A stretch of 63,214 bases of DNA, the filler included, from Salisapilia sapeloensis CBS 127946 (taxonomy: Eukaryota > Protista > Oomycota), in assembly GCA_023334545.1 (NCBI GenBank). It is 10 parts of 10 records of this genome, joined end to end, with 100 filler letters (N's around TTAATTAATTAA, not from the genome) between each part and the next. Parts side by side here need not be neighbours in the genome. Positions count along the whole stretch, not along the records: positions 49,802 to 51,425 come from JAADVB010001085.1; 9 more parts are not named here. One strand, given 5' to 3'. Positions 49,802-51,425 of this stretch are shown here, piece by piece (position 1 is the stretch's first letter; each line of letters begins with the position of its first letter). A program made the translations under genes and the position numbers. The notes below the pieces were generated by a model. The model saw only the letters and a list, made by a program, of their open reading frames with translations, searched no databases and was not told the origin of the DNA.

Positions 49802-49961
49802 AGAGCTCTTCAGGAATACCACCACCAACTATGGGGGGAATAGAAAGAACTACTTCGTAGTCCTTCCTTCTCTAAGAATAGACATTAAGTACATATGAAG
49901 AGCAACGTGTATAAGGTAAAGAAAAATGAAAACTGAGGGTTCTAAGGTATTATATTTAGCA

Positions 49962-50729
49962 TTATTGCTGATCATCTTCTTGCCTAAACATATCTCCTAA
50001 CAAATCATCGCTTTCGTTTCCATCATCTCGCCGCAGTCGTTCAGCTTCTTGTTCTTGTTCACGCATAGCTTCCTCCCCCTCTTGAATCTCACGCTCGGTT
50101 ACGGCTTCTTGCCAAGCAGCATGGTCGTTTACTAGAAAGTTCTCCGGCGTAGTCAAAGTCTCACTAGTCTGTCGTCCGCGGTACCTAGAAAGAAAACGAG
50201 TTGTTGGAGTACTTACGTTGTCGAATGTATCGCCGAATACAGCTTCTGCTTCTTCCTCAGTGTCGGAATCTGTGAACGTGAGGTCGATGATGCTTTCATC
50301 TTGGGTACGGCGTTGCACCAACGATCGCATCGACACGCTATATGACCGTAATAGGCGCCGCTCTCTCCGTAGAGACGCCAACCTTTGCTCGTTCTGTAGT
50401 TGCCTAGCTTGGAGTCGATCAATTGTCGTCTGCATTTGAATTCTTCGGTTGCGCTCTCGAGTAGCAACGGCATTTGCGTCTCTGACATTGTCAAGTTGAG
50501 CAGAAAGCTCCCTTGTAATGCGTTGTACCGTAGACTGGAGGCGTTCTATTGTGGCGTCTCGGTCGGAAATGGCCTCATCGGCAGCAACGGCTTCTTTCGA
50601 CATGTAATTATTTAACAGAAATTTACACAGATCGTCGTTAGAGGTGTCCGGGCGTTTCAATGGAGCAGGCCTCCGCTTCACCCACCCGTCGCTCCTGCGC
50701 AAGTACTTAAAAGTGTGTTCCTTCGGCAT
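49962..50729 (-). CDS. Putative viral accessory protein: basic N-terminus, coiled coil, acidic tail
   Basis: Intronless ORF from MPKEHTFKYLRRSDGWVKRRP; heptads ATIERLQSTVQRITRELSAQL...LASLRRERRLL; IIDLTFTDSDTEEE. Confidence 0.65.
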   Translation of the reverse strand: MPKEHTFKYLRRSDGWVKRRPAPLKRPDTSNDDLCKFLLNNYMSKEAVAADEAISDRDATIERLQSTVQRITRELSAQLDNVRDANAVATRERNRRIQMQTTIDRLQARQLQNEQRLASLRRERRLLRSYSVSMRSLVQRRTQDESIIDLTFTDSDTEEEAEAVFGDTFDNVSTPTTRFLSRYRGRQTSETLTTPENFLVNDHAAWQEAVTEREIQEGEEAMREQEQEAERLRRDDGNESDDLLGDMFRQEDDQQ

Positions 50730-51189
50730 TTTTATAAATGGAAAGAAATACAACAGCTCAACAACAAAGATTTGCTGCCGACCATTCAAACGGTTGGATC
50801 AGATTAACGGTATGGAACATTCTCACCCACCATCAACGGTGTCGCAAGGTCTGTAACGATCCAATGGGAAAGGGGATCAGATGTGTAACCTGGTCCGACC
50901 AGATTAGTCCGAGGTCTAATTATACATACATTCATACCATCATTCAGGCAATCATTCCTACTCGGAATGCATGTTCAGAAACATCCTGGTGAAAGATCGC
51001 GTAGTAACACATATGGTTCAACCAGTGACTAATTTTAGTCAAAAGATCGCATGACTTATGGGTACGTAATGACTGAAGGGTCACAAACGTATTAACAAGA
51101 TCGCATAAAAGTATCCTGCAATATCTCAACGCACATCGCACTTCTAGACGCATGAGATGCACCATTCGAAAGCTCTTGCCAGTGTCAGT

Positions 51190-51203
51190 TCATTCGGCAA
51201 TTT
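51190..51203 (+). promoter_or_regulatory. Oomycete INR+FPR core promoter in front of Rep
   Basis: TCATTCGGCAATTT, one mismatch to TCATTYYNCAWTTT, 3 nt before the ATG at 51207. Confidence 0.65.
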
Positions 51204-51206
51204 GCC

Positions 51207-51425
51207 ATGTTCAGCGCACCCAGACAAGTATCTTACCGAGCACAAGACCGCGAGTGGGATGCACGATTCAACGTCCAAACCGACGAGGCCCTCAACAACA
51301 TTATCTCCTCCATCAAGCGAGAAAACGATGCCGGAAAGTTTCGATACATTCTTATCGGAGGTGTTGAGATCGGAACCAAGCCATTCCAAGACGACTACGA
51401 AGTCCGACACATCCACGTTGCAGCC
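51207..51425 (+). CDS. rep: HUH-endonuclease replication initiator (Rep), N-terminal fragment
   Basis: EWDARFNV (motif I-like), YILIGGVEIG, RHIHVAA (motif II, HUH). From recall it matches Phytophthora parasitica virus-like Reps. Cut by the contig end. Confidence 0.75.

What the first reader, a model, noticed from the sequence alone, without database searches (positions are those of the whole stretch)
49802..51425. Fragment of an oomycete-type ssDNA virus
Seen: a stand-alone contig with divergent intronless ORFs. The plus ORF has WDARFN and HIH motifs of an HUH rolling-circle initiator. From recall it resembles Reps of Phytophthora parasitica virus and the parvo-like hybrid virus (PHV/NIH-CQV) group. 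The first 42 nt are also an open frame ending RALQEYHHQLWGE*, possibly the end of another viral gene. It could be an endogenous element, an episomal virus of this host, or a reagent contaminant, since PHV/NIH-CQV was traced to silica spin columns.
Basis: partly seen in the sequence, partly recalled or inferred. Interest (0 to 1): 0.85.

Follow-up and report, generated by a model that had tools for sequence, protein, structure and literature searches.

The report
Fragment of an oomyvirid ssDNA virus
This 1.6-kb piece is the left-hand part of a small single-stranded DNA virus of the recently named family Oomyviridae (the 'parvo-like hybrid virus' group once mistaken for a human hepatitis agent), and its genes sit behind a start-site signal typical of water moulds (oomycetes), which bears on the open question of who the real host is.

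Summary
Window 51207-51425 (+) encodes the first 73 residues of a replication initiator (Rep), cut by the piece's edge. WDARFN is at 51255-51272 and HIH at 51408-51416. Window 49962-50729 (-) is a divergent, intact 255-codon gene.

A 4138-nt JGI metagenome contig (L001) is 92.5% identical. It supplies the rest: a 390-aa Rep whose model matches circovirus HUH endonuclease domains and SF3 helicases, then a capsid gene.

More than 1000 protein clusters share this Rep. They lie on 3.2-4.6 kb contigs, many with terminal inverted repeats and phospholipase-A2 capsid genes. This is the published profile of Oomyviridae (NIH-CQV/PHV).

The window's lineage is at most about 65% identical in Rep to all other members, so it is a new member of a known kind.

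- The oomycete INR+FPR core-promoter motif ends one base before the Rep ATG. Across 84 related genomes it occurs exactly 109 times (about 0.4 expected per strand), directly before gene starts.
- A +1-frame ORF overlapping Rep is kept open in 66 of 72 relatives.

The 42-nt frame at the left edge is no more than chance. Whether the contig is a free virus, an integrated copy or a reagent contaminant cannot be decided from this piece.

The parts
49802..49961 (.). Non-coding stretch beyond the stop of the accessory gene (its 3' flank). It may lead towards the genome's left terminal repeat.
   Evidence: 87.5% identity to L001 over the 112 shared bases, the least conserved part; L001 ends 48 nt short. 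It folds no better than shuffles as ssDNA (z -0.7). No inverted repeat is found in the piece. The open frame is within chance.
49962..50729 (-). Accessory gene, 255 codons plus stop. It has a basic N-terminus, one very long helix (coiled-coil-like) and an acidic tail. It is specific to this lineage.
   Evidence: 64 synonymous against 12 non-synonymous codon differences from L001. The start is at ATG 50729. The only homologue among 5.8 billion clusters is P0001 in L001. No Pfam or PHROG family matches. The AlphaFold model has a helix at 31-143 (pLDDT above 90 for residues 50-125), a disordered acidic stretch at 144-203 and a helix at 195-253. Homology to the upstream ORFs of other lineages is only a weak hint (hhalign probability 36%).
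50730..51206 (.). Divergent intergenic control region between the accessory gene and Rep.
   Evidence: 96.0% identical to L001, far above the synonymous sites of the neighbouring gene, which points to constrained non-coding elements.
50994..51104 (+). Three direct copies of the word AGATCGC, starting at 50994, 51044 and 51098 (spacing 50 and 54 nt). They are candidate binding sites for a regulator or for Rep.
   Evidence: the repeat finder family D1. The same three copies with the same spacing occur in L001, and no other of the 84 loci has two or more upstream copies. Their function is inferred only.
51190..51205 (+). Oomycete-type INR+FPR core-promoter block (15 of 16 positions), ending one base before the Rep ATG.
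   Evidence: The pattern is INR, a 2-nt gap, then FPR, as defined for Phytophthora infestans in PMC3599244. It matches here with 1 mismatch. The same block lies before the Rep start in 44 of 72 relatives and is heavily enriched before gene starts across the family.
51207..51425 (+). Rep gene, first 73 codons, cut by the piece's edge. This is the N-terminal part of the HUH endonuclease domain, with the motif-I-like WDARFN (51255-51272) and the HUH motif HIH (51408-51416).
   Evidence: 96% identical to residues 1-73 of the 390-aa Rep of L001. 46 representative proteins match this fragment at E<=1e-3. Motif residues are invariant. The relative's model puts residues 16-22 and 67-75 on strands of a domain matching PCV2 and duck circovirus Rep endonuclease domains (TM 0.77-0.81).
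51157..51425 (+). ORF in the +1 frame overlapping the Rep 5' part, cut by the piece's edge. Candidate start codons are at 51157 and, inside the W-D-A codons, at 51259.
   Evidence: The stop-free run in this frame has a median of 175 codons and reaches 100 or more in 66 of 72 relatives; the +2 frame has a median of 25. An ATG sits at the W+4 position in 36 of 72 relatives and in the window, and no other ATG lies between 51207 and 51259. Only 1 third-position change from L001 occurs in the Rep part. Synonymous-codon sharing is modestly raised in Rep residues 31-120.

Best explanation
The piece is the left-hand 1.6 kb of the genome of a small linear ssDNA virus of the family Oomyviridae (Lineavirales, Cressdnaviricota). 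This is the group first known as NIH-CQV / parvo-like hybrid virus.

Shown:
- A divergent gene pair shares a conserved 477-nt control region.
- Leftwards lies a lineage-specific 255-aa coiled-coil protein with a basic head and an acidic tail.
- Rightwards lies the replication initiator Rep, of which only the first 73 residues (motif I-like WDARFN and the HUH histidines) are inside the piece.
- In the 92%-identical contig L001, Rep continues into an SF3 helicase and is followed by the capsid gene.

Inferred mechanism:
- In the host nucleus the ssDNA is made double-stranded.
- Host RNA polymerase II starts at the INR+FPR block that abuts the Rep ATG, giving a leader of about 15 nt.
- Rep is translated. 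Because the leader is so short, some ribosomes probably pass the first AUG and start the overlapping +1 ORF at the next AUG, 52 nt downstream.
- Rep uses the HUH metal site and a tyrosine beyond the piece's edge to nick and join the viral strand at an origin. That origin is most likely in the terminal inverted repeats seen in relatives. The SF3 helicase then unwinds the DNA.
- The INR+FPR signature says the transcription machinery used is that of an oomycete.
For: - Closest relative and layout: L001 is 92.5% identical over 1574 nt, with a 390-aa Rep, a 411-aa capsid-side ORF and a small ORF.
- Family size: more than 1000 clusters of about 390 aa on contigs that do not exceed about 4.6 kb.
- Fold: the Rep model has pLDDT 87.6. 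BFVD gives a 'parvoviridae sp.' Rep fragment from Grus japonensis at 50% identity, then at least 500 CRESS Reps over 320-400 columns. PDB gives Vientovirus Rep, AAV2 Rep68, and PCV2 and duck circovirus endonuclease domains (TM 0.77-0.81) and the PCV2 ATPase.
- Helicase by sequence profile: AAV Rep40 at 5.5e-5 and PCV2 Rep at 2.8e-4. Pfam Parvo_NS1 matches 41 of 48 members.
- Family traits in relatives: inverted repeats between contig ends in 32 of 55 long loci, up to 303 nt at 100%. PF08398 PLA2 scores above cut-off in 4 of 6 capsid-side ORFs tested. The L001 capsid-side ORF is homologous to those of 31 other loci.
- Taxonomy and literature.
- Real genes: purifying selection on the accessory gene.
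- Promoter: the INR+FPR definition comes from PMC3599244, which reports the combined motif in five oomycetes but not in a diatom, Arabidopsis or yeast. The window has a hit at 51190-51205. Across 84 loci there are 88 sense and 21 antisense exact matches, against a mean of 0.4 (maximum 5) for 300 column-permuted patterns. With up to 1 mismatch there are 167 and 55, against about 11. The block ends a median of 2-8 nt before the ATG of Rep, capsid-side and upstream ORFs, in the orientation of each gene, including in L001 and in the widespread 3292-nt lineage.
Against: - The 73-residue fragment has no significant Pfam, PHROG or PDB sequence match of its own. Even the 48-member profile finds only the helicase part. 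The endonuclease call is therefore fold- and motif-based, and was made on a relative, not on the window's own full protein.
- No tool returned a hit named NIH-CQV, PHV UCx or Phytophthora parasitica virus. The tie to Oomyviridae is through one named BFVD hit, shared traits and the literature.
- Neither the piece nor L001 shows a terminal repeat, and L001's capsid-side ORF has no detectable PLA2.
- The accessory gene has no INR+FPR block.
- Transcription start, leaky scanning, nicking site and host are all inferred; nothing here is expression data.
Confidence: 0.88

Rival explanations
1. Provenance rival A: the contig is a reagent- or laboratory-borne contaminant (silica spin columns), not a virus of the sequenced organism.
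For: PHV sequences were recovered from the membranes of 29 commercial kits and are widespread in unrelated datasets (PMC13141889). One family lineage (P0091) occurs as the same 3292-nt contig in more than 100 unrelated SRA runs. Family contigs are binned into bacterial MAGs. The piece is a short stand-alone contig cut inside a gene, as low-coverage contaminants are.
Against: This particular lineage is rare. Its accessory protein has one homologue, on one contig of one JGI metagenome, among 5.8 billion clusters. Its Rep is at most about 65% identical to every other cluster. An exact 22-mer from its promoter is absent from IMG/VR. A kit-borne sequence would be expected to recur nearly identically in many runs, as P0091 does. 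Rarity is only suggestive.
Confidence: 0.3
2. Provenance rival B: the piece is an endogenous viral element integrated in an oomycete (or other stramenopile) chromosome.
For: [quoted passage not shown]
Against: There is no host-like flank at either end: the right end is inside Rep, and the left end is 160 nt past the accessory gene. Both reading frames are intact. The accessory gene is under strong purifying selection relative to an environmental contig (64 synonymous to 12 non-synonymous). Gene order is collinear with free genomes that carry terminal repeats. A recent, still intact insertion cannot be excluded with 1.6 kb.
Confidence: 0.15
3. The plus ORF belongs to a Helitron transposase or an ordinary host gene rather than a virus.
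For: Helitron RepHel proteins also carry an HUH domain, and the fragment alone has no profile match.
Against: In the 96%-identical relative the domain is followed by an SF3 helicase (Parvo_NS1 / RNA_helicase profiles, AAV Rep40, PCV2 Rep), not the SF1 helicase of Helitrons. The gene lies on contigs of about 3.2-4.6 kb with a capsid gene and terminal inverted repeats.
Confidence: 0.01
4. It is a parvovirus (Parvoviridae), as many relatives are labelled in GenBank.
For: Pfam Parvo_NS1 hits the helicase part in 41 of 48 relatives. Relatives have PLA2-type capsid N-termini and inverted terminal repeats. The best named BFVD hit is labelled 'parvoviridae sp.'.
Against: The whole-length fold matches are to CRESS-DNA Reps: at least 500 hits over 320-400 columns. 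The endonuclease domain superposes on circovirus Rep domains. ICTV moved the group to Cressdnaviricota and calls the parvovirus labels erroneous.
Confidence: 0.03

Closest known systems
Oomyviridae (order Lineavirales): parvovirus NIH-CQV / parvo-like hybrid viruses, genera Nicoomyvirus, Avoomyvirus, Swoomyvirus
   Same: Rep combines an HUH endonuclease with an SF3 helicase of about 390 aa. Rep and capsid lie on the same strand. Genomes are small (contigs 3.2-4.6 kb). Relatives have terminal inverted repeats and PLA2-type capsid N-termini. The best named structural match is a crane-virome Rep at 50% identity.
   Different: Rep of the window's lineage (via L001) is at most about 65% identical to any other cluster, whereas the other members listed in the search with P0091 are 65% or more identical to P0091. 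The upstream accessory gene is about twice the usual size (255 aa against about 110-170) and has no clear homologue in other lineages. No PLA2 was detected in L001's capsid-side ORF. No terminal repeat was captured. Genus and species could not be assigned, because no named exemplar sequence was available to the tools.
Circoviridae and other CRESS-DNA virus Reps (e.g. PCV2 Rep, Vientovirus Rep)
   Same: The domain order and folds are the same: the endonuclease domain has TM 0.77-0.81 to PCV2 and duck circovirus domains, and the helicase matches the PCV2 ATPase.
   Different: Sequence identity is only 11-23%. The Pfam profile scans returned no endonuclease-domain family for any member. The genome is linear with inverted repeats rather than circular.
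Parvoviridae
   Same: Linear ssDNA with inverted terminal repeats, an SF3 helicase recognised by the Parvo_NS1 profile, and a PLA2 domain at the capsid N-terminus in relatives.
   Different: The endonuclease domain and whole-length Rep fold sit with CRESS Reps. ICTV excludes the group from Parvoviridae.
Oomycete nuclear genes with the INR+FPR 'supramotif' core promoter (Phytophthora infestans, PMC3599244)
   Same: The same 16-nt block occurs, with the same 2-nt gap, the same orientation and a position close to the start codon.
   Different: Here the block abuts the ATG (median gap 2-8 nt), giving leaders of about 15-20 nt. In P. infestans, hits are reported mostly within 50-100 nt of the start codon. 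Function in the virus is untested.

Membership tests
HUH rolling-circle endonuclease superfamily | Motif I-like strand at the N-terminus | tested here: met
   WDARFN is at 51255-51272. W, D, R and N are invariant in 28 and 48 relatives. It lies on the first strand (residues 16-22) of the relative's model.
HUH rolling-circle endonuclease superfamily | HUH motif (two histidines separated by a hydrophobic residue) | tested here: met
   HIH is at 51408-51416. H68 is invariant and H70 is kept in at least 90%. It lies on strand 67-75 of the model.
HUH rolling-circle endonuclease superfamily | Catalytic tyrosine (motif III) | not testable with these tools
   It lies beyond the piece's edge. Relatives have an invariant Y97 and a nearly invariant Y96 and Y107. 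Which one is catalytic was not resolved, because fold search gives no residue-level superposition.
HUH rolling-circle endonuclease superfamily | Endonuclease fold | tested here: met
   Tested on the 96%-identical relative only: PCV2 and duck circovirus Rep domains match at TM 0.77-0.81, rmsd about 3 A. There is no sequence-profile match for this domain.
Oomyviridae / Lineavirales | Cressdnaviricota-type Rep (HUH + SF3 helicase) related to named members | tested here: inconclusive
   The domain make-up is met via L001. The best named hit is 'Grus japonensis parvoviridae sp.' Rep at 50% identity; the ICTV exemplars named for the same crane species are parvo-like hybrid viruses. No phylogeny with the exemplars was possible.
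Oomyviridae / Lineavirales | Linear genome with terminal inverted repeats | tested here: inconclusive
   32 of 55 long relatives have inverted matches between their ends, up to 303 nt at 100%. The piece and L001 show none. The left 160 nt fold no better than shuffles. The ends were probably not captured.
Oomyviridae / Lineavirales | Jelly-roll capsid protein with a PLA2 domain | tested here: inconclusive
   It is not in the piece. PF08398 scores above cut-off in 4 of 6 relatives tested. L001's 411-aa ORF is homologous to the capsid-side ORFs of 31 loci, but no PLA2 was detected in it.
Oomyviridae / Lineavirales | Stramenopile (oomycete) host | tested here: inconclusive
   The INR+FPR enrichment before genes fits an oomycete host. 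This is sequence inference, not a host demonstration.
Helitron RepHel | HUH domain fused to an SF1 (Pif1-like) helicase within a large host element | tested here: not met
   The helicase is SF3. The context is a genome of about 4 kb with a capsid gene.
Parvoviridae | NS1-type endonuclease and placement of the replication protein within Parvoviridae | tested here: not met
   Full-length fold hits are CRESS Reps, and the endonuclease domain matches circovirus domains. ICTV reclassified the group.

The most novel reading that the evidence does not exclude
The contig is a fragment of a replicating oomyvirid in the organism that was sequenced, and that organism is an oomycete. It would then be a natural virus-host pair for a family whose host has so far only been predicted from endogenous copies. 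On this reading, the INR+FPR promoters before every gene, and a conserved overlapping ORF reached by leaky scanning from a roughly 15-nt leader, are general and previously undescribed features of the family's gene expression.
Probability: 0.3. Interest if true: 0.75.

Novelty: new member of a known kind. Interest (0 to 1): 0.5.

Why it matters
The NIH-CQV / PHV group has a troubled history. It was first claimed as a human hepatitis agent and then traced to spin columns. It is still mislabelled as parvoviruses of birds, dogs and plants, and was placed in its own family only in 2025. A 2026 preprint states that no ssDNA virus infecting oomycetes had been isolated before its own, unrelated virus, and that the oomycete host of Oomyviridae is predicted from endogenous copies.

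This piece adds a divergent lineage with an unusual accessory gene. More usefully, following it up showed that genes across 84 related genomes are preceded by the oomycete-specific INR+FPR start-site block. That is independent, sequence-level evidence for the host, and it makes the question testable with plain expression data.

If the assembly this contig came from is an oomycete's, the contig is a lead to a natural host. If not, it is one more example of these sequences turning up in unrelated assemblies and should be flagged so that it is not annotated as host DNA.

Tried and rejected
- Pfam, PHROGs and PDB sequence searches with the 73-aa fragment gave only noise: RIPK4 kinase, a carbonic anhydrase family, a movement-protein family and a terminase PHROG, all below threshold.
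- Pfam and PHROGs on the 255-aa ORF gave only weak coiled-coil noise.
- P0162, a 1270-aa hit in the representative search, turned out to be an ankyrin-repeat protein on a 316-kb contig. It is not an integrated copy.
- Looking for a named NIH-CQV or PHV protein: cluster look-ups of the NCBI-sourced hits and a third protein search with the widespread P0091 lineage returned no virus names.
- The original NIH-CQV and PHV papers (PMC3690853, PMC3807889) are not held.
- Circular closure or terminal repeats in L001 and the piece: none found.
- Hairpin potential of the left end: none.
- Other members of this lineage in IMG/VR by an exact 22-mer: none. IMG/VR holds only one family member by protein patterns.
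- Homology of the accessory ORF to upstream ORFs of other lineages: at best hhalign probability 36%.
- An INR+FPR block for the accessory gene: none within 2 mismatches.
- The second motif hit, at 49936-49921 (-), has no ORF behind it and is treated as chance.
- A fold search with the coiled-coil model was not run, as such matches are uninformative.
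Full report
**1. What is in the piece**

The piece is window 49802-51425 (1624 nt). It holds two divergent ORFs around a 477-nt spacer.

The plus ORF starts at ATG 51207 and runs off the piece's edge after 73 codons.

The minus ORF is listed from a TTG at 50789 to the stop at 49962-49964.

A run of that length is expected about half the time by chance, and it has no comparator.

**2. First searches**

The 73-aa fragment alone gives nothing significant in Pfam, PHROGs or PDB sequence searches. The 255-aa ORF gives only coiled-coil noise.

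A search of 1.84 billion representative proteins with the fragment found 46 proteins at E<=1e-3, 33 of them at E<=1e-10. Nearly all align from their own N-termini.

The minus ORF found a single homologue, P0001 (95% identity). It lies on a 4138-nt JGI metagenome contig, fetched as L001.

**3. The closest relative**

The piece aligns to L001 over 1574 nt at 92.5% identity without internal gaps, and reaches 48 nt further on the left. In the window's orientation L001 reads:
- accessory ORF (-);
- Rep of 390 aa (+), whose first 73 residues are 96% identical to the window's;
- a 411-aa ORF (+);
- a small ORF (+).

**4. Are the genes real?**

Against L001 the accessory ORF has 82 differences in 768 nt. 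Of these, 66 are at third codon positions, giving 64 synonymous against 12 non-synonymous codons.
- Codons 1-42 from ATG 50729 show 9 synonymous and 2 non-synonymous changes.
- The TTG extension shows 1 and 2.

The gene is therefore 49962-50729, 255 codons.

The spacer is 96.0% identical, and the Rep part 97.7% with a single third-position change. Both are far more conserved than the synonymous sites next door, so both carry extra constraint.

**5. What Rep is**

L001's Rep found 1055 clusters at E<=1e-3. The best 120 are about 380-460 aa long and sit on contigs that top out near 4.4 kb.

An AlphaFold model built with 48 relatives has mean pLDDT 87.6.

Against BFVD:
- the best hit is a 275-aa 'Replication protein (Fragment) [Grus japonensis parvoviridae sp.]' at 50% identity (E 2e-33);
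- it is followed by at least 500 CRESS-DNA virus Reps aligned over 320-400 columns at 14-22% identity.

Against PDB:
- the best hits are Vientovirus Rep and AAV2 Rep68;
- the isolated endonuclease domains of PCV2 and Muscovy duck circovirus Rep match at target-normalised TM 0.77-0.81 and rmsd about 3 A;
- the PCV2 ATPase domain matches at TM 0.67.

A 48-member sequence profile reaches AAV Rep40 (5.5e-5), B19 NS1 and PCV2 Rep, in the helicase part only. Pfam Parvo_NS1 hits 41 of 48 members.

So the protein is an HUH endonuclease fused to an SF3 helicase. The window holds the first two endonuclease motifs. The catalytic tyrosine lies beyond the edge; relatives have an invariant Y97 and a nearly invariant Y96 and Y107. 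I could not decide between them.

**6. Which family**

In the NCBI taxonomy, Parvovirus NIH-CQV and the parvo-like hybrid viruses UC1-12 are Nicoomyvirus moldensis, in family Oomyviridae, order Lineavirales, class Arfiviricetes, phylum Cressdnaviricota. 'Phytophthora parasitica virus' is an unclassified species.

The ICTV summary describes linear ssDNA genomes, 3 genera and 38 species, with likely stramenopile hosts. [quoted passage not shown] Another paper describes a PLA2-containing capsid and the widespread mislabelling as parvoviruses.

I fetched 83 further loci: 1 from IMG/VR, 80 from metagenomes and 2 from bacterial MAG bins. Their layout is:
- a small upstream ORF on either strand;
- Rep of about 390 aa;
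- a capsid-side ORF of mostly about 430-660 aa;
- contigs mostly 3.2-4.6 kb.

Of 55 loci of at least 3300 nt, 32 have inverted matches between their ends, up to 303 nt at 100%. PF08398 (parvovirus-type PLA2) scores above its cut-off in 4 of 6 capsid-side ORFs tested. L001's 411-aa ORF is homologous to the capsid-side ORFs of 31 other loci, though no PLA2 is detected in it.

These are the published traits of Oomyviridae. The tie to named members is nevertheless indirect, because no tool returned a hit named NIH-CQV, PHV or Phytophthora parasitica virus.

**7. How far this lineage is from the rest**

L001's Rep is at most about 65% identical to any other cluster. The window's 73 residues are 33-64% identical to 26 other members. 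By contrast, all 120 members listed in the search with P0091 are at least 65% identical to P0091.

The accessory gene is roughly twice the usual size. It has no clear homologue among the upstream ORFs of other lineages, which themselves fall into several unrelated clusters.

Its model shows:
- a basic N-terminus (10 K+R in 42 residues);
- a single helix at residues 31-143 (pLDDT above 90 for 50-125);
- a disordered acidic segment;
- a final helix.

I read it as a nuclear, oligomerising accessory protein of unknown role. That is inference.

**8. Oomycete-type promoters**

Just before the Rep ATG I saw what looked like the oomycete start-site element. I took its definition from Roy et al. 2013 (PMC3599244):
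- INR is YCAYTYY;
- FPR is MWTTTNC;
- the two are nearly always separated by 2 nt;
- the combined motif was found in five oomycetes but not in a diatom, Arabidopsis or yeast.

The 16-nt pattern matches window 51190-51205 with one mismatch and ends one base before the ATG.

In the 84 loci:
- exact matches number 88 on the Rep-sense strand and 21 on the other, against a mean of 0.4 (maximum 5) for 300 column-permuted patterns;
- with up to 1 mismatch the counts are 167 and 55, against about 11 for Markov-resampled sequence and 10 for the swapped order;
- 69 of 84 loci have at least one sense-strand match.

The matches are not scattered. Counts and the median gap from motif end to ATG:

| Position of the match | Matches | Median gap to ATG |
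|---|---|---|
| Before the Rep ATG | 35 | 2 nt |
| Before capsid-side ORFs | 60 | 5 nt |
| Before upstream ORFs, same strand | 12 | 2 nt |
| Before upstream ORFs, opposite strand | 18 | 8 nt |

Relative to the WDxRFN anchor, 44 of 72 loci have the block 56-97 nt upstream.

L001 has it before Rep and, exactly, 3 nt before the capsid ATG. The widespread 3292-nt lineage has it 1 nt before both Rep and its divergent upstream ORF. The window's accessory gene has none.

The simplest reading is that these genomes are transcribed by oomycete RNA polymerase II machinery, each gene from its own core promoter with a leader of about 15-20 nt.

I found no paper in the searchable library that holds both 'parvo-like hybrid' and 'oomycete'. 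I could not read the ICTV proposal itself, so I cannot say whether this has been noted before.

**9. An overlapping ORF**

In the +1 frame the window is open from 51157 to the edge. Across 72 relatives:
- the stop-free run covering the WDxRFN site has a median of 175 codons and reaches at least 100 in 66;
- the +2 frame has a median of 25;
- stops in the +1 frame number 13 and 18 in the first two 50-codon bins after the W codon, against 85-127 per bin in bins 2-7.

An ATG lies inside the W-D-x codons in 36 of 72 loci and in the window (51259). No other ATG lies between 51207 and 51259.

Same-amino-acid pairs share the codon more often in Rep residues 31-120 (0.50-0.54) than in residues 301-390 (0.39-0.44). 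This is a modest effect and is not corrected for amino-acid make-up.

With a leader of about 15 nt, leaky scanning to this second AUG is plausible. That is inference.

**10. Other elements**

Three AGATCGC words start at 50994, 51044 and 51098. They are kept with the same spacing in L001 and occur as a set nowhere else.

**11. Provenance**

- Against an old endogenous copy: intact frames, purifying selection, collinearity with free genomes and no host flank.
- Against a common kit contaminant: the rarity of this lineage (one other contig in the protein collection, none in IMG/VR). By contrast, the P0091 lineage recurs as an identical-length contig in more than 100 SRA runs.
- For contamination in general: the literature and family contigs in bacterial MAG bins.

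I put about 0.3 on contaminant and 0.15 on endogenous copy. The remainder goes to a virus present in the sample, whether of the sequenced organism or of something living with it.

**12. Verdict**

The piece is a new, divergent member of a known family.

The added value is the family-wide oomycete promoter signature and the conserved overlapping ORF. Both are descriptive findings that need expression data.

Before fetching the promoter paper I recalled, in my reasoning only, an older oomycete promoter consensus. I also recalled a few short textbook Rep motif strings of circoviruses and parvoviruses. None was entered into a tool, used as evidence or written here. The pattern used in all scans is the one printed in PMC3599244.

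The consensus lines that the alignment tool printed were not used.

Noticed in passing
window 51157-51425 (+1 frame relative to Rep); family loci L001-L084: A +1-frame ORF overlapping the first ~150 Rep codons is kept open in 66 of 72 relatives (median 175 codons, against 25 in the +2 frame). An ATG lies inside the invariant W-D-x codons in half of them and in the window (51259).
   Followed up: partly
window 50994, 51044, 51098 (+); same spacing in L001: Three direct copies of AGATCGC lie 50 and 54 nt apart in the Rep-upstream region. They are conserved in L001 and absent as a set from the other 83 loci. Their role is unknown.
   Followed up: partly
L019, L021, L028, L051, L060, L061, L062: In 7 of 84 loci the Rep reading frame is in two pieces: an N-terminal ORF of mostly about 140 aa (one of 99) and a C-terminal ORF of about 230-260 aa, on the same strand. 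The seven N-terminal pieces cluster together, so this may be a shared feature of a sub-lineage rather than damage.
   Followed up: no
L086-L095 (Logan assemblies of SRA runs): One lineage (Rep P0091) appears as a contig of identical length (3292 nt) and identical gene calls in more than 100 unrelated sequencing runs. This is the distribution expected of a reagent-borne sequence. It also carries INR+FPR blocks 1 nt before Rep and its divergent upstream ORF.
   Followed up: partly
L083 (Thermosediminibacteraceae MAG), L084 (Nitrospirales MAG): Whole family genomes (3952 and 3279 nt contigs) are binned into bacterial metagenome-assembled genomes in the GTDB species set. These are mis-binned viral or contaminant contigs.
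   Followed up: no
L038, L035, L045, L083, L017 and 27 other loci: Contig ends are inverted copies of each other, up to 303 nt at 100% identity. This fits linear genomes with terminal inverted repeats. L001 and the window piece do not reach such repeats.
   Followed up: partly
L001 1429-1414 (-), inside the capsid-side ORF: Besides the exact INR+FPR block 3 nt before the capsid ATG, a second block (1 mismatch) lies inside the capsid ORF. It might drive a shorter capsid form.
   Followed up: no
window 49936-49921 (-): A second one-mismatch match to the INR+FPR pattern lies just past the stop of the accessory gene, with no ORF of note behind it. It is probably chance.
   Followed up: yes
L007, L018, L024, L026, L030, L039, L047, L069, L073, L075, L076, L078-L081: Fifteen distinct family contigs come from one JGI metagenome (Ga0181363). 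Their identity to the L001 Rep used as query ranges from 54 to 61%. That is real diversity within a single sample, which is hard to explain by one contaminating sequence.
   Followed up: no
upstream ORFs of L002-L084: The ORF upstream of Rep is on the opposite strand in some lineages and on the same strand in others. It falls into several clusters with no detectable mutual homology, so this is a fast-turnover accessory slot.
   Followed up: partly
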